The notes under the pieces: model-generated
Databases searched by the model: none
Seen by the model: the letters and a program-made list of their open reading frames with translations, nothing else
What the model was told of the DNA's origin: nothing
Shown here: one piece after another, positions 19,094 to 49,586 of the stretch
Layout of the letters: each line of letters starts with the position of its first letter
Position numbering within the stretch: position 1 is the stretch's first letter
Virus record (IMG/VR): IMGVR_UViG_3300049460_000128
Location: 62,001 to 126,000 of that record
Strand: one strand, 5' to 3'
DNA: 64,000 nucleotides
Program-made: the position numbers and the translations under genes

Positions 19094-19161
19094 AATATCC
19101 ATTGTTGTAAGTCAATGTGGCTACCAGTATACTGGTAGCCATTTTACCATTTGGCACAAAT

Positions 19162-25614: not shown

Positions 25615-25993
25615 TGACAAGATTGTGTATGTGGTCCCCGAGGGGCCATCTTGGGAATATAACATCCAACATGGTTTCAAGATGCGTATTCGATTCACGA
25701 TGGATCGGACACAAGTCAGTCAAATGGGCCGGGCTACGATCATGCACCCAAGATCATTTTATGATCATACTAAGGCTCGTAAAAAGCTCTACGAACAATA
25801 CCGAGAGGTTGCAGCCAAGTTATTAGGGCAACGTAAGGTTGGCTGGAATGCTCGTACGTACAAGACCAATGACAACGATGTGTTGATCTATTGCCATGAT
25901 TACGATTGGTTGGCAGTCGCCCGCTTGCAAGGCCACGAGTTCATCGTGCAGACGCTAACCGCAATTGAATATGTGAAGGAAGAAAATGGGTAA
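25607..25993 (+). CDS. Hypothetical protein ('YC..W...KL' family)
   Basis: LIYCHDYDWLAVARLQGH; start MVDDKIV overlapping the upstream gene. Confidence 0.65.
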   Translation: MVDDKIVYVVPEGPSWEYNIQHGFKMRIRFTMDRTQVSQMGRATIMHPRSFYDHTKARKKLYEQYREVAAKLLGQRKVGWNARTYKTNDNDVLIYCHDYDWLAVARLQGHEFIVQTLTAIEYVKEENG

Positions 25994-29423: not shown

Positions 29424-29729
29424 ATGGAAATCATCGAAACTATTCCCGCCTTTAAAAAATATTGGTCAGACGACCATATCAGTCACCATTTCAAATATGG
29501 AGTTGTGGTCCGGTATGCACACATGACGAAAGCGATTGACGCTTTCGTGACTATCTACTGCGGATTTGACAGTACGGTATGGACCTACCGTAAGACCCAC
29601 ACGGTAGGTGATCTGAATATCGTATATGTGCATGACTTGGATTGGCAGGTCATTGCTAAACTGCATGGGATTGACTTTATTCCAATGGTCACTTCAATCT
29701 TGGTGAATCCGAGGTTCAATGATGTATGA
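29424..29729 (+). CDS. Hypothetical protein ('Y..D.DW...KL.G' family)
   Basis: IVYVHDLDWQVIAKLHGIDF. Confidence 0.7.
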   Translation: MEIIETIPAFKKYWSDDHISHHFKYGVVVRYAHMTKAIDAFVTIYCGFDSTVWTYRKTHTVGDLNIVYVHDLDWQVIAKLHGIDFIPMVTSILVNPRFNDV

Positions 29730-29994
29730 CGTGGTAGTCAAACGTTGTCTGGGGCTTGGGCTTGGTAAGTATGAGGTCGTGATTCCGCTCACTTACTTCA
29801 ATCAAATATACTCGGTATCCATGTATGCGCCGACATTCAAAGATGCGTATCATGATGCCAAAGATCATATAAGCAAGCAGCCATATTTGAAAGATGCGAA
29901 GTTCTACTATCTGGATCAGGATGCTCAACGTAGTAAATATGATCTATGGGATGATGGCATTGTGATGATGTTGATTCTCTTATTGAGTGAATAA
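29719..29994 (+). CDS. Small protein, C-terminal DD-helix family
   Basis: APTFKDAY; ends LWDDGIVMMLILLLSE. Confidence 0.65.
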   Translation: MMYDVVVKRCLGLGLGKYEVVIPLTYFNQIYSVSMYAPTFKDAYHDAKDHISKQPYLKDAKFYYLDQDAQRSKYDLWDDGIVMMLILLLSE

Positions 29995-31395: not shown

Positions 31396-31734
31396 ATGCA
31401 GCCAGCCGTCACATCTGAAGTCCAATTTCAAGCAATCACTCCCGAACACAGTAATCAAATGATTTGGTACGGGCGCATTGATGTGTATACCGCCAACGGG
31501 TCACGCCTGTTGAAGCAAGAATTTTCTGATCACGAATTCCAGAAGACCATTGAGTGGGCTCGTGATTGGCATACTACTGAAGATCTGGTTCCCAGTCGGG
31601 TGTTGTTGATCCCAGTGAGTATGGTTCAAACTTGGTCTGGCATTCACAAAGTGCATCATGATGCGAAGGCCGTACCAATCGATGACCTGTTCGACGATGA
31701 CTGTATTGTTATGGCAAGGCTGTCCATCATATGA
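31396..31734 (+). CDS. Small protein, C-terminal DD-helix family
   Basis: Ends LFDDDCIVMARLSII. Confidence 0.7.
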   Translation: MQPAVTSEVQFQAITPEHSNQMIWYGRIDVYTANGSRLLKQEFSDHEFQKTIEWARDWHTTEDLVPSRVLLIPVSMVQTWSGIHKVHHDAKAVPIDDLFDDDCIVMARLSII

Positions 31735-32039
31735 GCAAAGTCAAAAGCGCCATCATTGAATATACGGCGGCGAGATCAGTATATCAATCGTATTGGTCAG
31801 TGAACATCTATCCAAGCATGGATGGAATTGCTATGCCATTTGTTAGGACATTGGATCAGGTCATCACATACTTGCGTAAACTGGCACCAACATATGACAT
31901 ACACTACGAGTCAATTAAACTGGTGACACACGGTGTGACGAGTAATGGTGAGCATGATCCAAATCCCATCCTCATCAATGAAATCAACAACATATGGGAC
32001 GACGACGAACTGACTGTATTGAGATTGCGAGTGGCATGA
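31731..32039 (+). CDS. Small protein, C-terminal DD-helix family
   Basis: RTLDQVITYL; ends IWDDDELTVLRLRVA. Confidence 0.7.
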   Translation: MSKVKSAIIEYTAARSVYQSYWSVNIYPSMDGIAMPFVRTLDQVITYLRKLAPTYDIHYESIKLVTHGVTSNGEHDPNPILINEINNIWDDDELTVLRLRVA

Positions 32040-32362
32040 TGTATGACATTCTCGTCAGCTACATGCATCATCTGTCGCATCCGTGGTTCGGCATCATGGT
32101 GCCATGTGGTATGGCTATTGATACCAACATCGACGACTTCATACGCGCCGTTACCTTTGCTGACATAATTGAACGGACCAGAGTAGCGATACGGGCTGAT
32201 TCACGATCATGCAACAAAATCATTTTTACCAAAGGTCCCGTATATGTTGAAAATTTTCCTGACTTTCATACAGCCGAGCGACGCATCTATCCATCAATGC
32301 TGGTAGTTGATGACATATGGGATGATGCTGCCTTGGCTATCGTACGATTGAGTATATCATGA
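32036..32362 (+). CDS. Small protein, C-terminal DD-helix family
   Basis: Start MMYDILV; VTFADIIE; ends IWDDAALAIVRLSIS. Confidence 0.7.
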   Translation: MMYDILVSYMHHLSHPWFGIMVPCGMAIDTNIDDFIRAVTFADIIERTRVAIRADSRSCNKIIFTKGPVYVENFPDFHTAERRIYPSMLVVDDIWDDAALAIVRLSIS

Positions 32363-32712
32363 TTCCATATGGCCACTACCTGCTTGACTTGGTAATTTCG
32401 TATCGCCCCCATAATCAAAAAATGGGTCCATGGTTTGCTAGATGGTACGTGGCAAATCAGATCATCGATGATGCATATATCTACACACACGCGCCAACAT
32501 TTCATGACATAGTCGAGGAGATGAAAAAGTGGTTAACACGCGATCAATTACCACTTAATCGCATCTTTGTCATGCGTGGCATGTTAAATGAAGATCGGCA
32601 TGTTGACTTCATGAGTGCTGCCAGAAAGCTGCAAGATGGTATAGTGGAGATTGACTCATTGGAAGATGACGATCAATTGGTTTTGGCCAGACTTTCAATT
32701 GCGGAGAATTGA
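32359..32712 (+). CDS. Small protein, C-terminal DD-helix family
   Basis: APTFHDIVEEM; ends LEDDDQLVLARLSIAEN. Confidence 0.7.
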   Translation: MIPYGHYLLDLVISYRPHNQKMGPWFARWYVANQIIDDAYIYTHAPTFHDIVEEMKKWLTRDQLPLNRIFVMRGMLNEDRHVDFMSAARKLQDGIVEIDSLEDDDQLVLARLSIAEN

Positions 32713-33036
32713 TTGAACAAAGAAGTGATAATTGTGTCTAGCCATGACGGGAATCGAACCTGGTCCGGCTTTGTGATCAATGCAGGCGATAATTCACCCA
32801 ACGAACACATGAGTGTTTACACGGCGTCGTTTCACACTGTATTGTCTGGTGTTAGACAATTGGTGGAAGAAAACAACTACAAGGTGTCTCGTGTGATCTT
32901 AAAGGTGGGCCCCCTCAGATCGGACAAATACCCCAAGTTCTTCCAAGATCCAAGAGTCATATACCCCGACATGTCCTTGATTGAAGACTTGTTCGATGAC
33001 AATGAGTTTGCGGTTGCTCTTCTTAGCTGTCAGTAG
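32713..33036 (+). CDS. Small protein, C-terminal DD-helix family
   Basis: ASFHTVLSGV; ends LFDDNEFAVALLSCQ. Confidence 0.7.
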   Translation: MNKEVIIVSSHDGNRTWSGFVINAGDNSPNEHMSVYTASFHTVLSGVRQLVEENNYKVSRVILKVGPLRSDKYPKFFQDPRVIYPDMSLIEDLFDDNEFAVALLSCQ

Positions 33037-39255: not shown

Positions 39256-39875
39256 ACATATTCAAATTAGACACTCAATTGGTATTTGATGCCAATCGTT
39301 TATGTTCTGAATTCCATCACTTCACAGCAACCATACCCAGAAGAGCCAGTCAACCTCAACGATATTGTGTCAACTACAGTGAAATGGATGTTGATGATGA
39401 AATGAGTTTGATTGCATTTACGAGTGGGAAAAGCCCAGCATTGGAAGAGTTGAAACAAACTATATTGGGTGATTACGAGTATCAATACGACGACCCCGCC
39501 AGTATAGCGTTCTTGCAAACGTGGACACCAGAGAATTTGTTAAAGGTGTATCACGGTACCTATACGGCCGACGTAGTCAAGCAAGTGGCTGAATGGGTAA
39601 GGGCCCGAGGTGGCATTTTGGGACCAATCCAATATTTTGAAATTCCTCCTTGCTACTGCTACATCTATCATCACGATAAGCCATCATTTTTCAACCTCCA
39701 CATACCAATTCAAACTCAGGTTGGTAATTTCTTCATTGCTGAAAATGAGCTGGGAACCATGCTTGATGCTGGACACCTATATGCTCTGAACACTACTGGT
39801 TATCACACCGCTCTGAATTCGTCCAAGCAGACACGAATTCATCTCGTCTTTACCGTTCTGAATAATTCCCTGTAA
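39243..39875 (+). CDS. 2OG-Fe(II) oxygenase (Asp/Asn beta-hydroxylase-like), tandem paralog
   Basis: YIYHHD, LHIPIQT, LNTTGYHTALN, RIHLV. Confidence 0.75.
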   Translation: MQTLNIFKLDTQLVFDANRLCSEFHHFTATIPRRASQPQRYCVNYSEMDVDDEMSLIAFTSGKSPALEELKQTILGDYEYQYDDPASIAFLQTWTPENLLKVYHGTYTADVVKQVAEWVRARGGILGPIQYFEIPPCYCYIYHHDKPSFFNLHIPIQTQVGNFFIAENELGTMLDAGHLYALNTTGYHTALNSSKQTRIHLVFTVLNNSL

Positions 39876-39954: not shown

Positions 39955-40395
39955 TCAAATCAATGGGTTTGGATCAATTGGCGGTGTTGCCTTGGCAGCT
40001 CGCCGTTTAGCCGCACGTTCAGTTGCTTCGCTGGATGTTTTGGCTGTGTGGCAAGGATGACACAGTGTCTGGAGATTACCCATCTGCCAGAAAGACAAGT
40101 CACCCTGTGCTTCGATTAACGGCTTGATGTGATCCATATGCCATTTTGGAAGACCTTTGCGGGCACAAATGGTACCACACGATTTGCATTTGCCTTGGTC
40201 GCGTCTCCAGACAGCCTGGCGTGTTTTCGTGGGCCAGAAGAGCAGTTTGTACTCGGCGACGCATTTGACGTGCCAACGCGCTTTGCTGACTTTACCGCGA
40301 GCAGTGTTGCCGATAGCTTCATTGCACCAACGGCATGTGCCCAAGGGTGCAGTTTCAAAGTGAGGGGGAAGGGGAGGGATACGATGTTTACTCAT
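39955..40395 (-). CDS. HNH endonuclease with N-terminal Zn-finger-like CxxC
   Basis: CRWC...HVKC; RRDQGKCKSCG...MDHIKPL...NLQTLCHPCH; start MSKHRIP. Confidence 0.85.
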   Translation of the reverse strand: MSKHRIPPLPPHFETAPLGTCRWCNEAIGNTARGKVSKARWHVKCVAEYKLLFWPTKTRQAVWRRDQGKCKSCGTICARKGLPKWHMDHIKPLIEAQGDLSFWQMGNLQTLCHPCHTAKTSSEATERAAKRRAAKATPPIDPNPLI

Positions 40396-40405
40396 ACGGA
40401 TATTT

Positions 40406-40699
40406 ATGACTGATATACGGCTAGTGCCATTTACAACAACAATTACAATACGGCAGTGTGCAGCGAACGTATGGCATTCTGAAGTGAAGGAACAACATGC
40501 AACCAGATTTTCCGTTTCGTATTTTCGATTCCACCACACGCTCGCTGAAGTGAGAACATATTACGAGAATGAATACAAGATCAAGTTGACTAAGGTTCAG
40601 TATATCTTGGAAGCAGACGGCGACACCAAGACGTTAGAAGATGATGCTGACTGGGTTATGGCAACATTGACATACCGCCCATTAAAGGATCAGGCATGA
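40406..40699 (+). CDS. Small protein, DDxDW family
   Basis: HTLAEVRTYY; ends LEDDADWVMATLTYRP. Confidence 0.75.
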   Translation: MTDIRLVPFTTTITIRQCAANVWHSEVKEQHATRFSVSYFRFHHTLAEVRTYYENEYKIKLTKVQYILEADGDTKTLEDDADWVMATLTYRPLKDQA

Positions 40700-40956
40700 A
40701 TCTTGGTACTATTCAACCTTTACGTGGGCGTAGTGCAAACGGTGAATGGGTGACCTATTGCGAGATCATCGTCTTCATCAATGAGTCACGTTGTGATAGG
40801 ACTGGCACCATTATGATATGGGATGACGTATGGGAAGCCATGAAGTCATTTGATACCAAATATGGCGACATCAAATGGACATGGCAAGATTCACATGGCG
40901 AGATTGAACTCGATACTGACGCAAACTTGATTTTGTGGAAACTGTCAAAGTTCTGA
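40696..40956 (+). CDS. Small protein, DD-helix family
   Basis: Ends LDTDANLILWKLSKF. Confidence 0.65.
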   Translation: MNLGTIQPLRGRSANGEWVTYCEIIVFINESRCDRTGTIMIWDDVWEAMKSFDTKYGDIKWTWQDSHGEIELDTDANLILWKLSKF

Positions 40957-40970
40957 TCGAATTTCAAAAT

Positions 40971-40993
40971 ACCTACCTGGAGTTTACGACATC
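40971..40993 (+). repeat. Intergenic 23-bp element, copy 2
   Basis: Identical to 17647-17669; here it also forms a ctacctg/caggtag hairpin. Confidence 0.9.
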
Positions 40994-41066
40994 AGGTAGT
41001 CATTTCTTGACAGGATTCCTCAAAAATCCTCATATCTATGATCTCAACAATCTCTTGATTGTATCA

Positions 41067-41948
41067 TCATTGGTGTCCTTTACTCTTCATAAAAGCATCG
41101 AGGTCATCCATTGGAGTATTGTCAGTATTGGGTTTAACCATGTTGTTCATTGATGTTTTGCTTGCATTGGACTTCATAGCTTTCTTACCTTCGTTCTCAT
41201 CACGGAATAGTTTCTCATCGAACTTATAGAATGCACGATTCAGCATTAGGTCATCTGTATTTGCTATTGGGTCCAGGATAACCAGTTGATCGTCTCGCAT
41301 GATGAAGTTTTCGTCGTGTAGGTCTAGGGTGAAGCCCAATTGTTTGATGTCATGTAGGGTGGTCAGGAACAACTTTAGTTCATCGCCCAGGATATCTGGT
41401 TTATAGTTCATGTGATGATAACCGGACAGGTATTTGGTGAATTGGGTCAGGATAGGTATTTCGGAGTCTTGTAGGCGATCGAAGTAGAAGAGTGCGGTAG
41501 CCAGTTTGATGGTTGTTATATCAACTTCGCCGTCGTCTATTTCTGCGAATTGTTCTTCATATGGTTGGTATTTGAGGTCGAAGCGATAGTTGAGGATTGA
41601 TCTATTGCTTGCCAGTTTTTCCATTTTGACGAAGTTCACATAGTCTGGTGCGTCAGCGTGTCGGATGAAGAAAGCTGGCATCTTTTTTATCTGGCTAGTG
41701 AACTTTGGCAATAGTGGGTTGCTTTCATGTGTCTTGCAGTATTGTACGAATGCTGTGTATGCTGAGTCCAGAAGCCAGAATTTATAAACGGAGTCACCGA
41801 TCATTACAGCGGCGCCGTTAGCGCCTTGTCCCAGGAGTTTGATAGGGCCGTTGCCGTAAGTTGCTCGGAATTGGTCCAGGACTTCGGTGGCGGTCATATC
41901 GTGGAAACGTTTAACGCCTGTGAGTTCCATGAGTTCTTTGTATCGCAT
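41067..41948 (-). CDS. Protein kinase-like protein (Ser/Thr kinase/APH fold)
   Basis: LLGQGANGAA Gly loop, VYKF Lys, DLHDENF catalytic loop, VILDP metal motif. Confidence 0.8.
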   Translation of the reverse strand: MRYKELMELTGVKRFHDMTATEVLDQFRATYGNGPIKLLGQGANGAAVMIGDSVYKFWLLDSAYTAFVQYCKTHESNPLLPKFTSQIKKMPAFFIRHADAPDYVNFVKMEKLASNRSILNYRFDLKYQPYEEQFAEIDDGEVDITTIKLATALFYFDRLQDSEIPILTQFTKYLSGYHHMNYKPDILGDELKLFLTTLHDIKQLGFTLDLHDENFIMRDDQLVILDPIANTDDLMLNRAFYKFDEKLFRDENEGKKAMKSNASKTSMNNMVKPNTDNTPMDDLDAFMKSKGHQ

Positions 41949-41978
41949 TTGGTAATTCCCTAGAAATCAATATTTATT

Positions 41979-42215
41979 ATGAAGCAATATCGTATTAGTC
42001 AGACCAAGTGGACGGAGCGGATGTTTTGGACGTATATGATTGATGAGCGTCGTGCTCGTGGTCCGTATTTTGAGATGACGATTGTTCGTTGTTTGCGGGA
42101 GATCATGATTGATGTTGGTGATATGCCGTTTGTCATTAACATTGACCTTCCAGGGATCAAGGAGTTATTGGAGGATGAATCGCAGGTTGTTATGGCGATG
42201 TTGCGTCATACATAG
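41979..42215 (+). CDS. Small protein, DDxDW family
   Basis: RCLREIM; ends LEDESQVVMAMLRHT. Confidence 0.7.
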   Translation: MKQYRISQTKWTERMFWTYMIDERRARGPYFEMTIVRCLREIMIDVGDMPFVINIDLPGIKELLEDESQVVMAMLRHT

Positions 42216-42264
42216 TGGCAAATGGGGTTTTGATTAATTGGATGGATATTGTTAGCATTGCCAC

Positions 42265-42549
42265 ATGAACAGATATGCTTTTATAAAGACAATGGATAAG
42301 AATGGCTGTTTCGCCTATTGGGACGGGTACATTCTTCGTGATGGTGAATCACTGATGACGGCTGTATACCATCGTAGATCCAAATGGTGGGTGCAATGCC
42401 TCATGGATGCGTATGATATCATGATCGAGGATGGTTACATAGCTGACCATATTGAGTATGAAGTCAATTTGTGTGAACCAAATGGTGTAGTGATTACGAC
42501 GATTACCAATGAGGGTGATTGGGCGTTAGCGAGATTAACATATGAATAA
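42265..42549 (+). CDS. Small protein, DDxDW family
   Basis: Ends ITNEGDWALARLTYE. Confidence 0.75.
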   Translation: MNRYAFIKTMDKNGCFAYWDGYILRDGESLMTAVYHRRSKWWVQCLMDAYDIMIEDGYIADHIEYEVNLCEPNGVVITTITNEGDWALARLTYE

Positions 42550-42778
42550 AGTTTTGTTTCCGAGTTTTCAACACACGAGTGGAGTTGGCGTGTATGCCCA
42601 TGGTATCAATTGGCCGCGAGAAGATGGCGAGTTGTTGCGGTATTTTTTCAAAGATCGTGAATCGGTGTTGCGATATTTTGCCAGCCGTCTGTCGTTATTT
42701 CCAGGCGTGGAATTTTACTTCGTTGATCCGGAAGGCAATGAAAGTCTTATTACGCCCGACAAATGGATCAATGAATAA
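42542..42778 (+). CDS. Small protein, array member with truncated C-terminal motif
   Basis: KDRESVLRYF; ends ITPDKWINE. Confidence 0.6.
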   Translation: MNKVLFPSFQHTSGVGVYAHGINWPREDGELLRYFFKDRESVLRYFASRLSLFPGVEFYFVDPEGNESLITPDKWINE

Positions 42779-43067
42779 ACTGATTCTTGTTGTTCATCCG
42801 TTACCAGGCATTCATCGTGCCTGGACCAACCAGTCTAGTATTTGGTGTGTATATGGCCCAAACAATAGTAAGTGGCCTGTGATCAATGGTCATGCTGAGA
42901 TTGCGTATGTGTACAGTTTGCGGGAAGTCTATGACCGCTTTATGACACCAGAGGGTCAGGCAAAATATGGTGGTCCGTTTGAGACTGTTGTTCGTATTGA
43001 GGGTCAACCGGAAGATGTGCTGATCAGTGATGCTGATTGGGCAGTTGCCATGTTGAAATACAGCTAG
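42771..43067 (+). CDS. Small protein, DDxDW family
   Basis: Start MNKLILV; YSLREVYDRF; ends ISDADWAVAMLKYS. Confidence 0.75.
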   Translation: MNKLILVVHPLPGIHRAWTNQSSIWCVYGPNNSKWPVINGHAEIAYVYSLREVYDRFMTPEGQAKYGGPFETVVRIEGQPEDVLISDADWAVAMLKYS

Positions 43068-43102
43068 TTGTTATCTGGCAACCATACCAGTACCATGCTG
43101 GT

Positions 43103-43417
43103 ATGCACACTTTTATCATTGCCAAAATGCCCGCAGACTCGTTGGGTTGGACTTCGTATACCCTTTGGAGTACTGAGTCAATTGACACGCTCAAATGCTG
43201 TTATGATGATGGTGTGGGCATTGTGGATCATTTTTCCGAGTATCACAAATGGGCGAAAGCCATCTACGACAATCCAGGTGCGGGTCGTGTGATTCTTACC
43301 GTTGATAGTCAGACCATTGATCATCAGACTGGTAATCCGGGTGATGATATATGTCATGTTGAAATTACAAGTGATGCCGATTGGGCTGTTGCTGTTTTGA
43401 GTTATCCAATTGCATGA
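43103..43417 (+). CDS. Small protein, DDxDW family (start uncertain)
   Basis: Ends ITSDADWAVAVLSYPIA. Confidence 0.7.
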   Translation: MHTFIIAKMPADSLGWTSYTLWSTESIDTLKCCYDDGVGIVDHFSEYHKWAKAIYDNPGAGRVILTVDSQTIDHQTGNPGDDICHVEITSDADWAVAVLSYPIA

Positions 43418-43716
43418 AAAAACCCACCATTCCTCGTTTACCATTTCGTTTTATCCATATTGAGTTGACTAGGCCAACCCTGCGCCTCATTTATTTCTAC
43501 CCCAAGTGGGAAGTATCTGGATATAGGGGTGAGTTGACGCAGTTTCGCAATGTCGTTAATCGTGGTGCCACATTACGGGAAGTTAAGACATTGCTCGATG
43601 CTGATCCATATGTTGTTTCGACCACTCAGATAACTATATTGGATGGCGGACGTCGAATACCGGTTCTTACTGATGAGGATTGGGTTATGTTGATCTTGGG
43701 AGAGTCGCCGTCTTGA
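43414..43716 (+). CDS. Small protein, DDxDW family
   Basis: RGATLREVKTLL; ends LTDEDWVMLILGESPS. Confidence 0.75.
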   Translation: MKKPTIPRLPFRFIHIELTRPTLRLIYFYPKWEVSGYRGELTQFRNVVNRGATLREVKTLLDADPYVVSTTQITILDGGRRIPVLTDEDWVMLILGESPS

Positions 43717-43725
43717 TGGTGACTT

Positions 43726-43974
43726 ATGAGACGAATAAAGGTTAGAAAGTTTGACATATATCAGGAATTTAGCTCAATAGCGTGTTACGACCGGCATTTT
43801 GCCTTTCATAGCTACTGGGTGTCATTGCGGGACTGTTATGACGCACTGGTGACGAATGGTGACGTCTCTGGACGTTATAGGATAGAGATTAAGCTCGAAG
43901 GCGAAACAATGGTACTTGAGGATGATGGCGATTGGGCAGTTGCATTGATAAAGTGGAGTCATGTTAAGTTTTGA
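43726..43974 (+). CDS. Small protein, DDxDW family
   Basis: VSLRDCYDAL; ends LEDDGDWAVALIKW. Confidence 0.75.
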   Translation: MRRIKVRKFDIYQEFSSIACYDRHFAFHSYWVSLRDCYDALVTNGDVSGRYRIEIKLEGETMVLEDDGDWAVALIKWSHVKF

Positions 43975-44194
43975 TTATTATTTGATGCTTAGAAGCGATC
44001 GTACCGTTGATGTGTACGATCGCCACCATACTGCCCATGGTACGTATTCATCGATTGCTAAATGTCAGGAGTTCTTGATGCCTTGGGTTCTATCACGTAA
44101 GGAAACGGTTGGTACAATATCAGATGGCAAATGGATTCCACTAATGGATGACGGTGACTGGGTGATGTTTTTATTGAGTCGTTCAAATGGCTGA
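43961..44194 (+). CDS. Small protein, DDxDW family
   Basis: YSSIAKCQEFL; ends LMDDGDWVMFLLSRSNG. Confidence 0.75.
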   Translation: MLSFDYYLMLRSDRTVDVYDRHHTAHGTYSSIAKCQEFLMPWVLSRKETVGTISDGKWIPLMDDGDWVMFLLSRSNG

Positions 44195-44468
44195 CACTAC
44201 ATCCAATTCTCAAGGTTGGTCTCGTGAAAACGAAATTAGGATAGGTCCTTTCATTATTGATGGGGTTTGTTGTGCATGGGTTATCTGGGGTCATGACCGA
44301 ACCTATACCAAATGGATACAAAGTTTGAGTTCGTTGGTTGAGTGCAGGGAGTATTTGATGACACGTAATCTTTTGGGTGATGTAACATTGAGTATTATGG
44401 ATTATCCATCGTTCCAATTGGTGGATGAGACGGATTGGGCATTGGCTATGTTGACGCACGGACGGTAA
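44187..44468 (+). CDS. Small protein, DDxDW family
   Basis: LSSLVECREYL; ends LVDETDWALAMLTHGR. Confidence 0.75.
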   Translation: MADTTSNSQGWSRENEIRIGPFIIDGVCCAWVIWGHDRTYTKWIQSLSSLVECREYLMTRNLLGDVTLSIMDYPSFQLVDETDWALAMLTHGR

Positions 44469-44469
44469 A

Positions 44470-44736
44470 ATGGTTGATATCCCACATGTAACGCACATAA
44501 CGGTGGTTGAAGGGCGGTTGGCCAACTACCACAATATTGAGTGGATCGTTGTGATTCTTGATCCTTACTTGCTCACCGGCTTTACCTCGATTCGGGAGAT
44601 GTATGAGCACCTGCGCGATAAGAATTATTTTGCGGGCGAATTTATGATGACGATCAAGCATGGCTCGTTTGGTACTATCAACATCACCCATGAAAATTTG
44701 GAAGAGCAGATGGCGATTGCGTTTTTGACCTTATGA
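44470..44736 (+). CDS. Small protein, DD-helix family
   Basis: GFTSIREMYEHL; ends THENLEEQMAIAFLTL. Confidence 0.7.
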   Translation: MVDIPHVTHITVVEGRLANYHNIEWIVVILDPYLLTGFTSIREMYEHLRDKNYFAGEFMMTIKHGSFGTINITHENLEEQMAIAFLTL

Positions 44737-44972
44737 ATCAAGTCTACATCAACGACCTCCATCATCATGATTTCGTATTTTTCACGGTGCGTCATGGGCC
44801 GCATTTTGGAAGCATGACGACCAAAATATTCAACACGTTCCATGACGCATGTCGCTTTGCCCTAAACTCCCACGACATTGAGCGCCCATATGAGGCATCG
44901 GTGGTTATAGGCAACACCTTATACAAGCCCGAGAATGAAGAAGATTGGGCTATTTTGTTATTGACCGCATGA
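44733..44972 (+). CDS. Small protein, DDxDW family
   Basis: FNTFHDACRFA; ends PENEEDWAILLLTA. Confidence 0.75.
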   Translation: MNQVYINDLHHHDFVFFTVRHGPHFGSMTTKIFNTFHDACRFALNSHDIERPYEASVVIGNTLYKPENEEDWAILLLTA

Positions 44973-45520
44973 AACCAAGACTCGAAATTAGGCTAAGTTG
45001 GTCGCAAGATGTGTTTCAAGTCTACATCGAAGATCGAATACAAGGTCAAGTGGTCCATGAATCTCGTAGATTCATGCGTCAACAATTGGGCTCATTGGAA
45101 ATGGTGCCAGTTGTACTGCAACACTTGGGCTTGCGAATAGAAGATCATGCCTGTTATGTGATACACGAAGGGGCATATCGTCGTGTAATAACCAATGATG
45201 GTCCCGCACCACCTAGAGGTGGTGGCCTCCAGGGTGCTGATTGTTTTGAAACCTTTGATGATTTGCGGGCATTGCATCACAAATATAATCCCACCATACA
45301 TTACGTCAACTCCATGACCCTAGTAATTGAACGCAAGAACGGCTACTTCCAGATTCGTCAATTGGGTGGTCCCACCTGGCATTGGCCTGAAACCATGCAG
45401 GAAGCCAAACGTCTAATGCTTCAAAGTCATCCTCGCTATCAACATGGCTATGTTGTTGATGGGGATTTTCACGAACTCGAGACTGATGAGGATTGGGTCA
45501 TGGCTGCATTGACGTTATGA
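44969..45520 (+). CDS. Double-length DDxDW family member (possible fusion of two units)
   Basis: FETFDDLRAL and PETMQEAKRL; ends LETDEDWVMAALTL. Confidence 0.7.
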   Translation: MKPRLEIRLSWSQDVFQVYIEDRIQGQVVHESRRFMRQQLGSLEMVPVVLQHLGLRIEDHACYVIHEGAYRRVITNDGPAPPRGGGLQGADCFETFDDLRALHHKYNPTIHYVNSMTLVIERKNGYFQIRQLGGPTWHWPETMQEAKRLMLQSHPRYQHGYVVDGDFHELETDEDWVMAALTL

Positions 45521-45774
45521 TTGAACTGAACATTTATCCACGCATGTCATGGAATTATGACCAAGGCAAGCAGACTCTGAACTATGTCGCACAAGTGTTC
45601 AATGGTCGAGAGATTCGTATGGCTCTGAGCTATGATACTGTTTACGAATGCTATACCGCCTTGCGTGAGTGTGGGTTCCTTGAACGAGATTATACCGCTT
45701 GTGTTATGATCGATGGGGTGGTGCATCATCCGACTGACGATACCACGTGGATGATGGTATTGTTGAGTAGCTAA
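45517..45774 (+). CDS. Small protein, DDxDW family
   Basis: YDTVYECYTAL; ends PTDDTTWMMVLLSS. Confidence 0.75.
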   Translation: MIELNIYPRMSWNYDQGKQTLNYVAQVFNGREIRMALSYDTVYECYTALRECGFLERDYTACVMIDGVVHHPTDDTTWMMVLLSS

Positions 45775-45843
45775 AACATATTGATACCGTGATGTGGTAT
45801 GCCTATCCTGTATTTTTAACTACAAACCACATCATACACCATC

Positions 45844-46563
45844 ATGTCAGCTCAACCAGAACTCGTGCCAAATCTGCACAATATCATCACTCTGCCAGAT
45901 ACCAAAGCTCCAAACAAAAAGCATCCCAGTAACAAAGACAACTTCACCTACGGGATTGTTACCAATCTAATCAGTGACGAAATCAAAGATCATTCCATCT
46001 TCACTATGGACAACTCTGCTCGTTTCAGTATGACGGTCACTCGTCCGGTATGTCTGGGTACGCAGGACAATATTCCAGGCAGCAACAAGAAAAAGAACAA
46101 AGCCTACAATGTGGCTGGCGTATACATTATCTGGCAAGTGAAGCGTGCTGAAATTCTCCACTTTCTCCTGAAATTCGACAATGGTGATTTGGACTACATG
46201 TTCAAGAACTACGCTTGCTATTTTGGTGAATCTGATACTGCAAAACCAAGCGATGGCATTGGTGGTCGGGTCAACAGTCTGCGTCGTGATGTTGTAAAGC
46301 AATTGGCTGCAAATGTGGCTCCTGCTAGGTCAACCAGCAAAGAAGCCAGTGCGTATAAGCTTGCCCAACAGATGCTGGCCAACTATGCGTTGTATGTTGA
46401 ACCAAATGCTGGTTTCACTACTGCGGTTGATTGTCTGTTTGCCAGTTACGTTGATATTGCTACCATCCAGGGGTATAATGGCCAAGCTGTTGAGAGTGAC
46501 TGGGTTGAGCGTACTCTCATCATGACTTACAAACACAATGGTTTACTGGTGAATCAAAAATAA
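45844..46563 (+). CDS. Divergent GIY-YIG-like nuclease
   Basis: AGVYIIW ... CYFGES ... GGRV pattern. Confidence 0.45.
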   Translation: MSAQPELVPNLHNIITLPDTKAPNKKHPSNKDNFTYGIVTNLISDEIKDHSIFTMDNSARFSMTVTRPVCLGTQDNIPGSNKKKNKAYNVAGVYIIWQVKRAEILHFLLKFDNGDLDYMFKNYACYFGESDTAKPSDGIGGRVNSLRRDVVKQLAANVAPARSTSKEASAYKLAQQMLANYALYVEPNAGFTTAVDCLFASYVDIATIQGYNGQAVESDWVERTLIMTYKHNGLLVNQK

Positions 46564-46571
46564 GGAAGTAT

Positions 46572-46859
46572 ATGGGTAAGGTGGTACATTTGATCTTGAA
46601 TAAGAAATCAAACCATTCGGATCAGATCTTGATTCTGGAGCATGGGTATCCAGAGTTGGTATGGGATCATTCGTTAGACCTTACCCCCATTGAAGCCTTG
46701 ACAGAGGTTAAGCGGATATACTTGCATCACATTGAACGTGGTAATCAAGTATTGGTCAGCACCTGTCATGAATACCGTCGTAAGCAAGATGGCAATGAGT
46801 TGCGCCCCCTCGACGTTATGGATGACGATGCTATGATTGTTGAGGCATTGAGTCGATGA
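46572..46859 (+). CDS. Small protein, DD-helix family
   Basis: LTPIEALTEV; ends VMDDDAMIVEALSR. Confidence 0.65.
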   Translation: MGKVVHLILNKKSNHSDQILILEHGYPELVWDHSLDLTPIEALTEVKRIYLHHIERGNQVLVSTCHEYRRKQDGNELRPLDVMDDDAMIVEALSR

Positions 46860-47116
46860 ATATCACTTTTGAACCAATCAGTGCAGACTTCAGAGATACA
46901 GGTCACTCGACATCCGTTACCTATATGTCATCAAATACCGAGAGCCGCGTCGTCATCGGGTGCTTGAATCTTAAGCTTGGCGTTAATTTATGGCTCCATG
47001 ATATGGAACGTAAATTTGATTACTTGGCCGATTCTCTGACCGTTGAATGGCACGATGGTGAAGTTTTTGCCATTAGATCTGAATTAGATTTGGTTTTGGC
47101 CTTGCTTCGCTTTTAA
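46856..47116 (+). CDS. Small protein, DD-helix family
   Basis: Ends IRSELDLVLALLRF. Confidence 0.65.
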   Translation: MNITFEPISADFRDTGHSTSVTYMSSNTESRVVIGCLNLKLGVNLWLHDMERKFDYLADSLTVEWHDGEVFAIRSELDLVLALLRF

Positions 47117-47520
47117 GCCAAGTAGCCAAATTTCCTTGCATTCGCGATCGCATCAGGGCTCATAGCAACCGGAATAGTTGTTGCGCCCTGATCCCGTAGG
47201 TATGAGAAGCGATGTCTACCATTACTAAATGTCACACGTCCTTTTTCATCCACATACGCTTCACTGGCTTCGACGGTCTCGCCAGTTTTCAGGAATTCAC
47301 CAAAGCCCTGATAGCGTTTACCAATTCCTTGTGTACCACCTGTACCAATATAGAATTCAGTGTCTTTGCTCCAGGCATGGTTGAACGGTTGCACCAATAT
47401 GTCTACCAGTGTGTCCTGGTGACGCTGGGACGACAGGCTGAGCTTAAAGGGAATCGGTGTGTCAGATTGTGGCAATGACACGCTATGTGACCGCTCGTTT
47501 ATGATTTCTGTGTATCGCAT
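47113..47520 (-). CDS. ParB-like nuclease-domain protein
   Basis: VTFSNGRHRF motif (cf. DGHHR); start MRYTEIINE with TAAATA upstream. Confidence 0.6.
   Translation of the reverse strand: MRYTEIINERSHSVSLPQSDTPIPFKLSLSSQRHQDTLVDILVQPFNHAWSKDTEFYIGTGGTQGIGKRYQGFGEFLKTGETVEASEAYVDEKGRVTFSNGRHRFSYLRDQGATTIPVAMSPDAIANARKFGYLA
47114..47130 (+). repeat. 17-bp direct repeat, copy 1
   Basis: taagccaagtagccaaa, also at 48285-48301. Confidence 0.85.
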
Positions 47521-47663
47521 GATTGGTTCCGAAAGTTGATATTTATGCGTGGTGGGCCAAGGCCAATTGAGTCTGAAAAGTTGAAATGCCGCATATTGAG
47601 GCTTGCTGGTTATTGTATACAATATGGCACCAACACAGTAATCAACAACAACAAAAACTACAA

Positions 47664-48278
47664 ATGACTACTAGCCCGCAACCACAACCACAACACGCCA
47701 CCATTATTCAACTGCCAGTCAGTCAACCAGCAATCAGCAATGACACTTGGATTTCCAAATACGAAGGATGCGGCATCTCGATCAAATTTGGTAAATTCTT
47801 GAAGTTGCTTGATCGTGATGCATGGCGCCACTTCAGAGATGGCAAGGGCATTTATGCCCTGTATTATATACCAGACGCGTTGATGACTCAGTTGAATACC
47901 TTGCCTGTAGTAAACGAACATGTAATTTATGTTGGTGAATCCAGTCATTGTTTATACGGGCGTTTCAATAAATTCAAAGCCACTTTGAATCAATTGATGC
48001 AACATCGTGTAGCTAGTACCGGAACCACGGGTGGCTCATTGATTCCTCGTAGTAGTCATAGCGCCGCCTCTCACTTCTTCAACGAAGTGAGCGCCAGCAC
48101 ATCTGATGTATACTATGATAAGGACACCCACGATTTTATTCGTGTTGATGGTTATACGCTCATGGTCAGGATTGCAGTTGAACAATCCAATTGGATTTAT
48201 GACACCGCAGACCATGAGCGTTCGTTCTTGACTGCCGTGAAGGCAATTAATCCACCACGTTTGTATAATATCAAATAA
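47664..48278 (+). CDS. GIY-YIG-like endonuclease
   Basis: KGIYALY ... VIYVGES ... YGRF. Confidence 0.65.
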   Translation: MTTSPQPQPQHATIIQLPVSQPAISNDTWISKYEGCGISIKFGKFLKLLDRDAWRHFRDGKGIYALYYIPDALMTQLNTLPVVNEHVIYVGESSHCLYGRFNKFKATLNQLMQHRVASTGTTGGSLIPRSSHSAASHFFNEVSASTSDVYYDKDTHDFIRVDGYTLMVRIAVEQSNWIYDTADHERSFLTAVKAINPPRLYNIK

Positions 48279-48301: not shown

Positions 48302-48316
48302 CTTTCTGATAGTCGT

Positions 48317-48344
48317 AAAAAAGCCCGGATATCCGGGCTTTTTT
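48317..48344. terminator. Terminator after the major capsid gene
   Basis: aaaaaaGCCCGGAT-ATCCGGGCttttt. Confidence 0.85.
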
Positions 48345-48380
48345 GTTTGTCTTCAAAGCGACCACTAGGGTCGCTAATGA

Positions 48381-49586
48381 TTACAGGAACTTCAGCGAAG
48401 CGGTGTTCATACCGACCAGACCCAGGTAGTCAGCAGCGTTACCCAGTGACGAAGCAGCGTTCGTCAGTTCCAGGTAGCCGTAACGGGTCATGAACGATAC
48501 AACTGGTTCGAAGGTGTTTGGATCAATGATCACACCGCTCGAGGTCAGTGGTACGTATGGGCAGTAGTAAGCTGCGGCGTCGATCTCGCCTGGGCCTTTG
48601 TAACCAACCAGAACTGGGGTGCTATCGCTAGCGTACTGGTCGACGTAAACGCGCATCGAGTTGTTCAGCATACCAACGAACTTGGTGTTAGTTGGAGCTT
48701 CGAACGTGCCTTCGGTAGTACGGGCGAAAGCCGAAGTAGTAGCCGATTGCAGAATGGTCAGTGCGGTTGGGGAAACAACAACCCAGTTACCTGCGCCACG
48801 ACGGGTACGTGCAGCGATCAAGTTAGCTTGACGGTTGATCAGAACTGCCAGAGCAGCGTGAACGTCACCGACGAAGGTTGGGGTGCCCGAAACAGCGGCT
48901 TGGTCAAACACAGCGGTTGCTGCACCTGGCAGTGCGCGCAGGGAAGTCAGGATTTCCTGGTCGATTTCGGCGGTAATTTCTTGCGCCAGTGCAGCCATGA
49001 TTTCTGCTTCGATGTCGATACCTTGTTGAGCTTGCGAATCTTGCGCAGCTTCAAAGGTCCAACGAGCGCTCAGACGACGTGTTTTCGCCTCAACGACTTC
49101 TTTCAGAATCTGGATGCTCAAACGCTTACCAGCAGTACCTTCCAGGGTCGAGGTTGCTTCAGCTTTTGGAGCTGTTGCATCGCCGTTACCCGAGTAAGCA
49201 CGAGCGATATCGTATGGTGACAGTGCTTCTTTACCAGCGGTAACGCCAGCGAACGAATCAGCGTAACGAACGCGCAGGGTGTGGATCTGTGCCACTGGCG
49301 AAGTCATTGGCTGAACACCAATAATTTCGTTAGCGATCACGGTTGGCATCACACGACGGATAACCGGCAGGATAACCTTGTTCAGGGTAGCGATGTTAGC
49401 GCTGTTGGTTGCACCCGAAGTTGCATTTTCCATCAGCTTCAGTTCACGATAGGTATTATCGAGAACGGTTTCCATCATACGCTTCTTGGTTGGGTTTACC
49501 GAACCATCTTGATTGTGAGTCAGATCTTTGCCTTCGCAGAGCATTTTTTTAGTTACTGACCACTGGGATTCAAACAGTTTACTCAT
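48381..49586 (-). CDS. gp23: Major capsid protein (T4 gp23-like)
   Basis: ILPVIRRVMPTVIANEIIGVQPM, VEAKTRRLSARWTFEAAQD, AALAQEITAEIDQEIL, YCPYVPL, FMTRYG. Confidence 0.96.
   Translation of the reverse strand: MSKLFESQWSVTKKMLCEGKDLTHNQDGSVNPTKKRMMETVLDNTYRELKLMENATSGATNSANIATLNKVILPVIRRVMPTVIANEIIGVQPMTSPVAQIHTLRVRYADSFAGVTAGKEALSPYDIARAYSGNGDATAPKAEATSTLEGTAGKRLSIQILKEVVEAKTRRLSARWTFEAAQDSQAQQGIDIEAEIMAALAQEITAEIDQEILTSLRALPGAATAVFDQAAVSGTPTFVGDVHAALAVLINRQANLIAARTRRGAGNWVVVSPTALTILQSATTSAFARTTEGTFEAPTNTKFVGMLNNSMRVYVDQYASDSTPVLVGYKGPGEIDAAAYYCPYVPLTSSGVIIDPNTFEPVVSFMTRYGYLELTNAASSLGNAADYLGLVGMNTASLKFL

What the first reader, a model, noticed from the sequence alone, without database searches (positions are those of the whole stretch)
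41979..47116. Tandem array of ~14 hypervariable small proteins sharing a C-terminal (D/E)DxDWxMAxL helix
Seen: consecutive, mostly stop/start-overlapping 77-105 aa ORFs (one double-length member) with almost no N-terminal similarity but convergent ends. Examples: TNEGDWALARL, SDADWAVAML, SDADWAVAVL, TDEDWVMLIL, DDGDWAVALI, DDGDWVMFLL, DETDWALAML, NEEDWAILLL, TDEDWVMAAL, DDTTWMMVLL. Many also share a central (S/T)hxE/D helix start (ATLREV, SSLVEC, TSIREM, NTFHDA, ETMQEA). The DNA at the motif is conserved (GAYTGGG). With the copies at 29.7-33.0 and 40.4-41.0 kb there are ~22 members. Inference: a variable target-binding surface plus a constant docking helix, i.e. an adaptor or anti-defence repertoire that plugs into one shared partner. 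The GxT/SxxE helix start is loosely reminiscent of the HicB N-terminal fold. GAYTGGG could also act as a crossover point for cassette shuffling.
Basis: partly seen in the sequence, partly recalled or inferred. Interest (0 to 1): 0.78.

Follow-up and report, generated by a model that had tools for sequence, protein, structure and literature searches.

The report
Expanded small-protein family in jumbo phage
An uncultured rhizosphere jumbo phage carries about twenty fast-diverging copies of one new 80-100-residue protein domain in tandem arrays; the shared C-terminal motif most likely belongs to the fold's core rather than being a docking peptide, and the function (probably host-takeover or counter-defence binding) is untested.

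Summary
Between 41979 and 47116, 13 of 16 co-oriented, mostly stop/start-overlapping ORFs belong to one protein family by profile search. With 40406-40699 and a five-gene second array (31396-33036), the window holds 19 supported members and 2-4 marginal ones.

The family matches no Pfam, PHROG or NCBIfam model. It occurs only in a small clade of uncultured Rak2/Atu_ph07-type jumbo phages, in syntenic arrays beside the gp23-type capsid gene.

AlphaFold2 gives confident models (pLDDT about 90) with the same beta-beta-beta-alpha-beta-beta-alpha order for one member of each array. The C-terminal one is [S/T/D/N]-[D/E]-x-[D/E] followed by W and hydrophobic residues. In clear members W is replaced by L, M, F or I. 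So the motif reads as part of the fold's core, not a detachable docking helix.

GAYTGGG is explained by the codons for D-W-(A/V).

Array orthologs are 25-78% identical where the capsid protein is 98-100% identical. Gene gain, loss and mosaic histories are visible, and dN/dS stays below 1.

Best reading: a lineage-specific expansion of a small non-enzymatic binding scaffold in a hyperplastic accessory region. The role is untested.

The parts
41979..42215 (+). A01, 78 aa. W-less member with C-terminus ...EDESQVVMAMLRHT.
   Evidence: E 0.009-0.018 with the first profiles and recruited on iteration. No ortholog in the related arrays.
42265..42549 (+). A02, 94 aa. Core member (TNEGDWALARL).
   Evidence: Profile E 2e-16. 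Orthologs in L014, L012 and L008 at 29-54% identity.
42542..42778 (+). A03, 78 aa. Unassigned small ORF inside the array; ends ...ITPDKWINE.
   Evidence: Not recruited by any profile and no ortholog found. Membership is open.
42771..43067 (+). A04, 98 aa. Core member (SDADWAVAML).
   Evidence: Profile E 3e-15. Start chosen at the ATG that overlaps the A03 stop.
43103..43417 (+). A05, 104 aa. Core member (SDADWAVAVL).
   Evidence: Orthologs at 38-52% identity.
43414..43716 (+). A06, 100 aa. Core member (TDEDWVMLIL). The only basic member (pI 9.5).
43726..43974 (+). A07, 82 aa. The most conserved member and the one modelled.
   Evidence: AlphaFold2 pLDDT 90.3, pTM 0.77. Elements: b7-14, b17-22, b27-31, a34-44, b51-57, b60-64, a67-76. 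Orthologs at 49-78% identity.
43961..44194 (+). A08, 77 aa. Core member (DDGDWVMFLL).
44187..44468 (+). A09, 93 aa. Core member (DETDWALAML). Its orthologs in L014 and L012 carry an N-terminal extension (179-187 aa).
44470..44736 (+). A10, 88 aa. W-less member (...NLEEQMAIAFLTL).
   Evidence: E 0.006 with the 56-member profile and recruited on iteration.
44733..44972 (+). A11, 79 aa. Core member (NEEDWAILLL).
44969..45520 (+). A12, 183 aa. An unrelated N-terminal half of about 90 aa plus a C-terminal family domain (TDEDWVMAALTL).
   Evidence: hhalign gives the C-terminal half a probability of 98% and the N-terminal half no match. Orthologs of 164-183 aa occur in L002, L014 and L008.
45517..45774 (+). 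A13, 85 aa. Core member (DDTTWMMVLL).
45844..46563 (+). A14, 239 aa. Unrelated insert in the array.
   Evidence: No family, Pfam, PHROG, PADLOC or NCBIfam match. No ortholog in the related loci.
46572..46859 (+). A15, 95 aa. A conserved orthogroup with the C-terminus D[VI]MDDxxMxxExLSR; probable distant member.
   Evidence: Orthologs in L002, L014 and L012 at 34-56% identity. The window copy is not recruited by the profiles; the L002 ortholog scores E 0.005.
46856..47116 (+). A16, 86 aa. W-less member (...SELDLVLALLRF).
   Evidence: E 0.001 and recruited on iteration.
40406..40699 (+). Outlying core member, 97 aa (DDADWVMATL), upstream of the kinase-like gene.
   Evidence: Profile E 2e-15.
40696..40956 (+). 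Marginal candidate, 86 aa (...DTDANLILWKLSKF).
   Evidence: E 0.02-0.04 only.
31396..33036 (+). Second array of five 102-117-aa paralogs (31396-31734, 31731-32039, 32033-32362, 32359-32712, 32713-33036) ending in DDxxhhhARLS.
   Evidence: hhalign against the first family gives probability 86%, E 4.6e-6, full length. The AlphaFold2 model of 32359-32712 has pLDDT 90.6, pTM 0.85 and the same element order. Orthologous array at L012 2595-4208.
29719..29994 (+). Marginal candidate, 91 aa (...LWDDGIVMMLILLLSE).
   Evidence: E 0.11 in the window; its L012 ortholog (573-875) scores E 0.0012.
41067..41948 (-). Divergently oriented kinase-like gene (293 aa) that bounds the array in every related locus.
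   Evidence: Glycine-rich loop plus VYKF read from the sequence. Weak match to phrog_15752, a T7 gp0.7-type kinase (E 0.0016). Orthologs at 51-77% identity.
47113..47520 (-). ParB/Srx-like (PFIN) gene closing the array. The likely start is the ATG at 47520 (MRYTEIINE...).
   Evidence: PF22162, E 1.9e-4, below the gathering cut-off. The leader is shared with the kinase-like proteins.
48381..49586 (-). gp23-type major capsid protein, the conserved anchor of the synteny.
   Evidence: 80% identical to Sinorhizobium phage Phosso and 68% to Atu_ph07. 98-100% identical across the five related contigs.

Best explanation
This is a lineage-specific expansion of one previously undescribed small protein domain, in a hyperplastic accessory region of an uncultured T4-superfamily jumbo phage of the Rak2 / Atu_ph07 / Phosso group.

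Structure (predicted). Each gene encodes a single compact alpha/beta domain of about 80-100 residues. The order of elements is a three-stranded beta meander with a conserved W in strand 2, helix 1, a beta hairpin, and a C-terminal helix. Helix 1 starts with an S/T-x-x-D/E capping box. The 'constant' C-terminal motif is the N-capping box of helix 2 ([S/T/D/N]-[D/E]-x-[D/E]), followed by W and four or five hydrophobic residues. These presumably pack on the sheet, so the motif is conserved because it holds the fold together.

What varies. The strands, loops and exposed helix faces are free to vary. No polar residue is invariant, so the proteins are probably binders rather than enzymes (inferred).

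Expression (inferred). The genes lie head to tail with overlapping stop and start codons, on the strand opposite the late head genes, so they are probably made together as a battery.

Evolution (shown). The arrays change by duplication, loss and exchange of whole genes between related phages. This gives protein divergence far above that of the structural genes.

Likely role (inferred, not shown). A repertoire of host-takeover or counter-defence binders, each tuned to a different target.
For: One family, full-length homology:
- Pairwise and profile searches.
- Second array linked by hhalign, probability 86%, E 4.6e-6.

Fold:
- Two independent AlphaFold2 models, pLDDT 90.3 and 90.6, pTM 0.77 and 0.85, with the same b-b-b-a-b-b-a order. 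The C-terminal helix is at pLDDT 93-96.

Capping box:
- Position -4 is S/T/D/N in 54 of 55 members and position -1 is D/E in 51 of 55.
- DSSP helices start at residues 34 and 67, right after S33 and D66.
- W is replaced by L, M, F or I in recruited members.

New family:
- No Pfam hit for any of 56 members. No PHROG and no PADLOC family above noise.
- A profile search of 1.84 billion representatives returns only 27 hits. These are the window's own proteins, small proteins of related uncultured contigs, and four repeat-protein artefacts.

Synteny and turnover:
- The layout kinase-like gene, array, gp23 gene recurs in L002, L008, L012 and L014. A shared orthogroup order is kept, with insertions, deletions and duplications.

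Rates:
- Capsid protein 98-100% identical, array orthologs 25-78%.
- dN is 0.16-0.9 in the array against 0.001-0.14 in head genes.
- dS is 0.8 to saturated in the array against 0.08-1.3 in head genes.
- dN/dS is below 1.

Mosaicism:
- For A07, L002 is the window's closest relative (78%) and L012 the farthest (49%).
- For the kinase-like gene, A05 and A06, L002 is the outlier.

Precedents:
- T4 accessory anti-defence genes amplify in tandem through 6-10 bp microhomologies (PMC9391042).
- Phage G carries about 35 copies of a small zinc ribbon (PMC7824862).
Against: - No expression data. No RNA run could be listed, and promoter-like sites are no more frequent than in shuffled sequence.
- No partner, target or phenotype is known.
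- Helix positions 0, +1, +2 and +5 are all hydrophobic. That arc of about 200 degrees is wider than one packing face needs, and it could mean an additional dimer or partner interface.
- Saturated dS means part of the divergence may reflect old alleles or exchange with distant phages rather than fast evolution in place.
- Fold matches are all weak (best Z 4.5-5.0, TM 0.5-0.66), so fold class gives no functional inference.
Confidence: 0.6

Rival explanations
1. The body of each protein is a variable target-binding surface. The C-terminal (D/E)DxDWxhAxL helix is a constant docking element that plugs every paralog into one shared phage or host partner, making the array an adaptor repertoire.
For: - W and L are nearly invariant while overall identity is about 15%.
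- The hydrophobic arc of the helix is wider than a single packing face (residue pattern).
- T-even internal proteins set a precedent for diverse bodies with one constant targeting peptide (PMC3012670).
Against: - The helix is an integral, very confidently placed element of a compact domain in both models.
- The acidic residues fit a capping box.
- W is freely replaced by L, M, F or I in members.
- No candidate partner co-varies with the array.
- The motif lies 2-9 residues from the end, not on a flexible tail.
Confidence: 0.12
2. The proteins are HicB-like or Dmd-like antitoxin mimics. In this model the array works as a 'poly-antitoxin' locus in which each paralog neutralises a different host toxin of abortive-infection or toxin-antitoxin systems.
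For: - Weak structural likeness to HicB-class domains: TTHA1013 (1wv8) at Z 3.3-3.7, a HicB-like phage protein in BFVD at TM 0.41, and DUF1902 and DUF2188 clusters at TM 0.46-0.60.
- T4 keeps small anti-toxin proteins (Dmd, TifA) in an accessory island, and these amplify in tandem under selection (PMC9391042).
- The members show arms-race-like divergence.
Against: - No HicB-type Pfam match in any of 56 members.
- All structural scores are below the level the tools call meaningful.
- No HicA-like neighbour and no C-terminal DNA-binding domain.
- This is a special case of the best explanation rather than a distinct mechanism.
Confidence: 0.15
3. The small proteins are virion-internal or ejected proteins made with the head. 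The array sits next to the head module, and its larger neighbours carry a T4-CTS-like leader.
For: - The array lies between the kinase-like gene and the gp23 / prohead-protease (S77) block.
- All 10 kinase-like and ParB/Srx-like neighbours start with MRYxE[LI]xE. This resembles, from memory, the T4 capsid targeting sequence.
- Internal proteins of T-even phages are highly diverse defence proteins (PMC3012670).
Against: - The small proteins share no N-terminal leader; their N-termini are the most variable part.
- They are on the strand opposite the head genes.
- No virion proteome exists.
Confidence: 0.08
4. The repeated GAYTGGG-containing DNA is itself the functional element, a recombination site for cassette shuffling, and the peptide motif is its by-product.
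For: - The only DNA repeats in the array are the 20-37-nt motif-coding segments, with up to 20 of 21 identical bases between 43669-43689 and 45482-45502.
- T4 recombines at 6-10 bp microhomologies (PMC9391042).
- The identity step between the window and L002 falls at the A06 motif, about 43660-43690.
- Crossovers there would stay in frame.
Against: - Synonymous sites at the motif are not conserved. GAT:GAC is 27:13 against a background of 415:185, and the third bases of the following codons vary freely.
- Members without W lack the DNA motif yet keep the helix.
- The identity steps also coincide with gene ends and with A07 simply being the most constrained gene.
Confidence: 0.05

Closest known systems
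Hyperplastic accessory regions of T4-superfamily phages, for example the T4 dmd-tifA 'anti-TA island' (PMC9391042)
   Same: - Small (60-100 aa), co-oriented, non-essential-looking genes between conserved modules.
- Content differs between close relatives.
- Tandem amplification through short microhomologies has been documented.
- The T4 examples have a counter-defence role.
   Different: - Here about 20 genes per genome are paralogs of one domain family. In T4 the neighbours are unrelated to one another.
- No function is known for any member.
- The family has no sequence relation to Dmd or TifA that the searches could detect.
T-even internal proteins with a conserved capsid targeting sequence (PMC3012670)
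   Same: A diverse set of small proteins shares one short constant segment and lies in polymorphic loci of T4-like phages.
   Different: - The constant segment here is C-terminal and part of the fold.
- In T-even phages it is an N-terminal leader. That the leader is cleaved off is from memory, not from the paper read here.
- A CTS-like leader is seen on the larger neighbours, not on the small proteins.
Small beta-beta-beta-alpha domains of the RNase H-like periphery: HicB N-terminal domain / TTHA1013, DUF2188, DUF1902, DUF1508 (YegP/UPF0339)
   Same: - Three-stranded meander followed by a helix.
- Similar size.
- Frequent in phages.
- Best structural neighbours of both models.
   Different: - No sequence-model match.
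- Scores are weak (Z at most 5, TM 0.5-0.66).
- The hairpin plus capped C-terminal helix is not covered by the best DUF2188 match, which aligns residues 1-67 only.
Lineage-specific expansions in jumbo phages, for example about 35 zinc-ribbon copies in Bacillus phage G (PMC7824862)
   Same: One small domain multiplied to tens of copies in a single jumbo phage genome.
   Different: - A different fold.
- Here the copies are arranged in tandem, translationally coupled arrays that are syntenic across related phages.

Membership tests
HicB antitoxin (N-terminal domain) | Match to HicB-type sequence models (Pfam) | tested here: not met
   No such hit for 10 members at E up to 1 or for any of 56 members at E up to 10.
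HicB antitoxin (N-terminal domain) | Partial RNase H-like beta-beta-beta-alpha-beta fold | tested here: inconclusive
   TTHA1013 (1wv8) scores Z 3.7 and 3.3. A HicB-like BFVD entry scores TM 0.41. These are below the level the aligner's notes call meaningful.
HicB antitoxin (N-terminal domain) | Adjacent hicA toxin gene and, in most HicB proteins, a C-terminal RHH/HTH DNA-binding domain | tested here: not met
   The ten ORFs submitted to Pfam (flanking genes plus A12, A14, A15 and A16) show HNH, PFIN and weak cupin hits only. The domain ends 2-9 residues after helix 2.
DUF2188 (PF09954) | Match to the Pfam model | tested here: not met
DUF2188 (PF09954) | Same fold | tested here: inconclusive
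   The AFDB cluster representative gives E 2.6e-3 and TM 0.60 over residues 1-67. The Atlas cluster gives TM 0.58. The B-array model does not reproduce the hit.
T4-type internal proteins (CTS-directed) | Shared N-terminal capsid targeting leader with an (L/I)xE cleavage site | tested here: not met
   N-termini of the small proteins are unrelated to one another. The MRYxE[LI]xE leader is found only on kinase-like and ParB/Srx-like neighbours.
T4-type internal proteins (CTS-directed) | Presence in the virion | not testable with these tools
   The phage is uncultured and no proteome exists.
Diversity-generating or cassette hypervariation systems | Long template/variable DNA repeats near a reverse transcriptase, or near-identical silent cassettes | tested here: not met
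   Only 20-37-nt motif-coding repeats at 62-95% identity. Orthologs are stable across genomes with dN/dS below 1. The window was not scanned specifically for a reverse transcriptase.
Hyperplastic-region accessory genes of the T4 superfamily | Small genes between conserved modules, with content and sequence differing sharply between phages whose core genes are near-identical | tested here: met
   Capsid protein 98-100% identical against array proteins at 25-78%. Insertions, deletions and duplications between five syntenic loci.
Known anti-defence or defence families (PADLOC-DB) | Match to a model | tested here: not met
   No match for six members or for the neighbours, apart from one noise-level hit (E 0.006) for 32359-32712.

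The most novel reading that the evidence does not exclude
The arrays are a phage-encoded 'repertoire' system: about 20 diversified inhibitors built on one minimal scaffold, each neutralising a different host defence or toxin. The unusually hydrophobic, near-invariant C-terminal helix would then double as a common interface, either for homo- or hetero-oligomerisation among paralogs or for binding one shared phage or host factor such as the adjacent kinase-like protein. That would make the family a modular adaptor set with no described counterpart in phages.
Probability: 0.15. Interest if true: 0.75.

Novelty: new member of a known kind. Interest (0 to 1): 0.5.

Why it matters
Small fast-evolving genes in the accessory regions of large phages are where many counter-defence and host-takeover functions have been found, and most remain unannotated. 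This family offers four things:
- A clean definition: a profile, two confident models and a structural reading of its motif.
- About 20 natural variants per genome, and more than 70 across five related phages. This is a ready-made natural library for screening against defence systems of rhizosphere alphaproteobacteria.
- A measured case of how far accessory genes can diverge (25-78% identity) while the capsid protein stays 98-100% identical.
- A caution for motif-based inference: a conserved terminal 'motif' can be nothing more than a helix cap plus core residues.

Tried and rejected
- Megablast of the array and tblastn of A07, the kinase-like gene, L008:581-847 and 32359-32712 against 50,697 GenBank phage records found nothing meaningful.
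- The 41 kb around the Phosso capsid gene holds no member by HMM. The rest of Phosso and Atu_ph07 was not scanned by HMM.
- Pfam, PHROGs, PADLOC and NCBIfam give no family for the members or for most neighbours.
- A PDB sequence-profile search gave only a chance cereblon stretch (E 0.02).
- The ESM Atlas feature search gave only unnamed viral clusters at 0.84.
- The search for related loci with the alignment failed because there was no conserved 7-10-column stretch.
- Four long proteins among the 27 profile hits (P0001, P0012, P0014, P0022) get their scores by summing many short stretches. The two read, P0012 and P0014, are internal-repeat proteins; P0001 and P0022 are taken to be the same kind of artefact.
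- The first hhalign of 11 against 5 sequences matched only the motif. The relation between the two arrays appeared only with deeper alignments.
- The N-terminal half of A12 is not a degenerate second copy.
- Scans for sigma-70-like sites and for TATAAATA were no better than shuffled sequence.
- No RNA run was listed, and the only DNA run is the probable source sample, kept as contigs.
- A DNA-mimic idea is not supported. Median pI is 5.3 and median net charge -4.
- An assignment of 47586-48278 as a GIY-YIG-like nuclease rests only on reading the sequence and has no database support.

Full report
**Context**

The window is part of an uncultured jumbo myovirus.
- Its gp23-type major capsid protein (48381-49586, minus strand) is 80% identical to that of Sinorhizobium phage Phosso (469 kb) and 68% to Agrobacterium phage Atu_ph07.
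- The source contig is IMGVR_UViG_3300049460_000128 (296,594 bp). The only run that holds the array is a rhizosphere metagenome.
- The array DNA has no megablast match among 50,697 GenBank phage records.

**The observation**

Between 41979 and 47116 there are 16 co-oriented plus-strand ORFs, here called A01 to A16.
- Neighbours overlap by 4 nt (ATGA), 8 nt or 14 nt, or lie 1-69 nt apart.
- Sizes are 77-104 aa, except A12 (183 aa) and A14 (239 aa).
- A regular expression for the W motif finds 11 ORFs. All are on the plus strand between 40.4 and 45.8 kb, and each hit is 2-9 residues from the C-terminus. There are none among the other roughly 400 ORFs of the window. This is far beyond chance.

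**Is it one family?**

- Pairwise phmmer links the members (E down to 6e-7 in a database of 414 ORFs).
- A profile of nine members recovers 40406-40699 and the C-terminal half of A12 at E about 5e-8, and it aligns members over its whole length.
- With a 56-sequence profile that includes relatives from other contigs, A01, A10 and A16 (which lack the W) score E 0.001-0.02 and are recruited on iteration.
- A03 and A15 are never recruited. A14 is unrelated.
- The similarity is not confined to the C-terminus. The alignment shows a conserved W in the second strand, a central S/T-x-x-D/E helix start, a hydrophobic strand and a D/G turn.

**The other copies**

- The five genes at 31396-33036 end in DDxxhhhARLS. 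With shallow alignments only the motif matched.
- With 56 against 10 sequences, hhalign gives probability 86% and E 4.6e-6 over 84 columns, that is full length.
- A combined profile supports 19 members in the window: 14 of the first type and 5 of the second.
- 40696-40956 and 29719-29994 are marginal. 25496-25993 and 29424-29729 are not supported.

**Structure**

AlphaFold2 on A07 with the 56-sequence alignment gives pLDDT 90.3 and pTM 0.77. The elements are strands 7-14, 17-22 and 27-31, helix 34-44, strands 51-57 and 60-64, and helix 67-76.

AlphaFold2 on 32359-32712 with 11 sequences gives pLDDT 90.6 and pTM 0.85. The order of elements is the same, with a longer loop before the last strand.

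Fold searches find nothing close.
- Foldseek against PDB gives nothing below E 0.2.
- VIA-align gives a best Z of 4.5-5.0, always to RNase H-like or actin-ATPase-type subdomains, integrase cores, UPF0339 (2k49) or TTHA1013 (1wv8).
- AFDB clusters give DUF2188 (E 2.6e-3, TM 0.60, residues 1-67) and DUF1902.
- The Atlas gives TM 0.58-0.66 to DUF2188, DUF1508 and unnamed viral clusters.
- BFVD gives a 66-aa protein of Rhizobium phage P10VF (E 0.01, TM 0.55 by model and 0.66 by target) and a HicB-like entry at TM 0.41.
- None of the 56 members matches any Pfam model consistently.

Membership is not supported.

**What the motif is**

Among 55 W-motif members from five loci:
- the residue four positions before W is S, T, D or N in 54;
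- the residue just before W is D or E in 51.

That fits the classical helix N-capping box (N-cap S/T/D/N, N3 D/E; established knowledge of helix capping), with W at N4. DSSP starts helix 2 at residue 67, directly after D66, and helix 1 at residue 34, directly after S33 with D36 at N3. The central '(S/T)hxE/D' motif therefore fits a second capping box.

After W, positions +1, +2 and +5 are always hydrophobic. Positions +3, +4 and +6 tolerate E, R, K, S and T.

In recruited members W is replaced by M, L, F or I. Examples are DDDMAIAMLTY, LDDLAIARLTF, SEDELVIARLTY and the whole second array.

Both models place the helix with pLDDT 93-96. Together this points to a core structural element. It does not exclude a second role, because the hydrophobic arc (about 200 degrees) is wide. 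Burial could not be computed, because model coordinates are not exposed by the tools.

**DNA level**

- GAYTGGG is simply D-W-(A/V/G).
- The D codon before W is GAT 27 and GAC 13, the same ratio as all D codons of these genes (415:185). The third bases of the following codons vary freely.
- The only DNA repeats in the array are the 20-37-nt motif-coding segments at 62-95% identity. The best pair is 43669-43689 against 45482-45502, with 20 of 21 bases identical.
- T4 recombines at 6-10 bp microhomologies to make tandem amplifications (PMC9391042). These segments could therefore serve as in-frame crossover points, but nothing here shows that they do.

**Distribution**

A profile search of 1.84 billion representative proteins returns 27 hits at E up to 0.001.
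- Nine are the window's own proteins.
- Four are long proteins whose scores sum many short stretches. The two that were read, P0012 and P0014, are internal-repeat proteins, and all four are treated as artefacts.
- The rest are small proteins from related uncultured contigs.

Their contigs (L002, L003/L014, L006/L012 and L008-L011) all show the same layout: kinase-like gene (minus), array (plus), further genes, then the gp23 gene (minus).

Reciprocal-best-hit groups show a shared backbone order (A02, A05, A06, A07, A08, A09, then the A12 and A13 types). On top of this there are lineage-specific insertions, losses and duplications. A further set of members lies just before the capsid gene in the relatives.

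**Rates**

| Measure | Array genes | Head genes |
|---|---|---|
| Protein identity | 25-78% (kinase-like gene 51-77%) | capsid 98-100% |
| dN | 0.16-0.9 | 0.001-0.14 |
| dS | 0.8 to saturated | 0.08-1.3 |

- The identity figures are. dN and dS are NG86 estimates.
- dN/dS in the array is roughly 0.13-0.6. The genes are under purifying selection and are real.
- They have diverged far more than the core, partly by faster protein evolution and partly through older or exchanged alleles.
- Relationships are incongruent. For A07 the window is closest to L002 (78%) and farthest from L012 (49%). For the kinase-like gene, A05 and A06, L002 is the outlier.
- In a sliding window, identity between the window and L002 rises at about 43660-43690 (the A06 motif) and falls at about 43950-43966 (the end of A07). 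This fits gene-wise exchange, but equally fits A07 being the most constrained gene.

**Neighbours**

- 41067-41948 (minus strand) has a glycine-rich loop and a weak match to the T7 gp0.7-type kinase PHROG (E 0.0016).
- 47113-47520 (minus strand) is weakly ParB/Srx-like (PF22162, E 1.9e-4).
- 39955-40539 (minus strand) is an HNH endonuclease.
- All ten kinase-like and ParB/Srx-like proteins in the five loci begin with MRYxE[LI]xE.

**Function**

Nothing here tests it. The inference rests on five points:
- position in a hyperplastic region;
- orientation opposite to the head genes;
- translational coupling;
- absence of invariant polar residues;
- the divergence pattern.

It also rests on precedents: T4 anti-defence genes in accessory islands (PMC9391042), diverse T-even internal proteins (PMC3012670) and expansions of small domains in jumbo phages (PMC7824862).

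I therefore read the arrays as a battery of small binders for host takeover or counter-defence. Confidence is moderate for the role and high for the structural and evolutionary description.

**Verdict**

This is a new protein family, but of a known kind.

Noticed in passing
window 41067-41948 (-) and 47113-47520 (-); L002 98-961, 4421-5257, 5254-5997, 6000-6761; L014 105-974, 5441-6277; L012 7012-7881, 11471-11878: All ten kinase-like and ParB/Srx-like proteins flanking the arrays start with the same leader, MRYxE[LI]xE. From memory this resembles the T4 capsid targeting sequence (MKTYQEFIAE, cut by the S77 prohead protease after (L/I)xE). An S77 protease gene lies about 3 kb away (51203-51853). 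They may be packaged and ejected proteins.
   Followed up: partly
window 47113-47622 (-): The longest ORF starts at TTG 47622. The conserved leader and the orthologs indicate that the real start is the ATG at 47520, giving 135 aa.
   Followed up: partly
window 47586-48278 (+); L014 4833-5444; L012 10854-11474 and 12966-13514: A conserved protein of about 200-230 aa next to the arrays has a 'GIYALYYIP...VIYVGES...R' pattern that reads like a GIY-YIG nuclease. No Pfam, PHROG or NCBIfam model supports this. Together with the HNH gene at 39955-40539, homing-type nucleases may promote the local mosaicism.
   Followed up: partly
window 48381-49586 (-) compared with L002, L008, L012, L014: The capsid protein is 98-100% identical across contigs from different metagenomes. 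Its dS ranges from 0.08 to 0.57, and the neighbouring head genes reach dS 1.3. Even the structural block seems to have an uneven history.
   Followed up: partly
window 38536-39255 and 39243-39875 (+): Two tandem paralogous genes of about 210-240 aa. The second has a weak Asp/Arg beta-hydroxylase (cupin) match, E 0.011.
   Followed up: no
window 21962-23545 (+): A 527-aa ORF ends in a very cysteine-rich tail (...SCGCGNTKAGGCECLCLGCDCP), seen.
   Followed up: no
window 18001-20000 and 40001-44000: Strong positive GC skew (0.28, and 0.12-0.22), well above the rest of the window. The second stretch coincides with the first half of the array.
   Followed up: no
window 48315-48346: A strong hairpin (14 bp stem, 6 G-C pairs) with T tracts on both sides, which looks like a bidirectional terminator. 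It lies between the convergent genes 47586-48278 (+) and the capsid gene (-).
   Followed up: no
L014 2928-3467; L012 9417-9980; window 44969-45520: Several orthogroups carry N-terminal extensions of about 90-100 aa in front of the family domain. The A12 extension is unrelated to the family. The extensions of the A09 orthologs were not analysed.
   Followed up: partly
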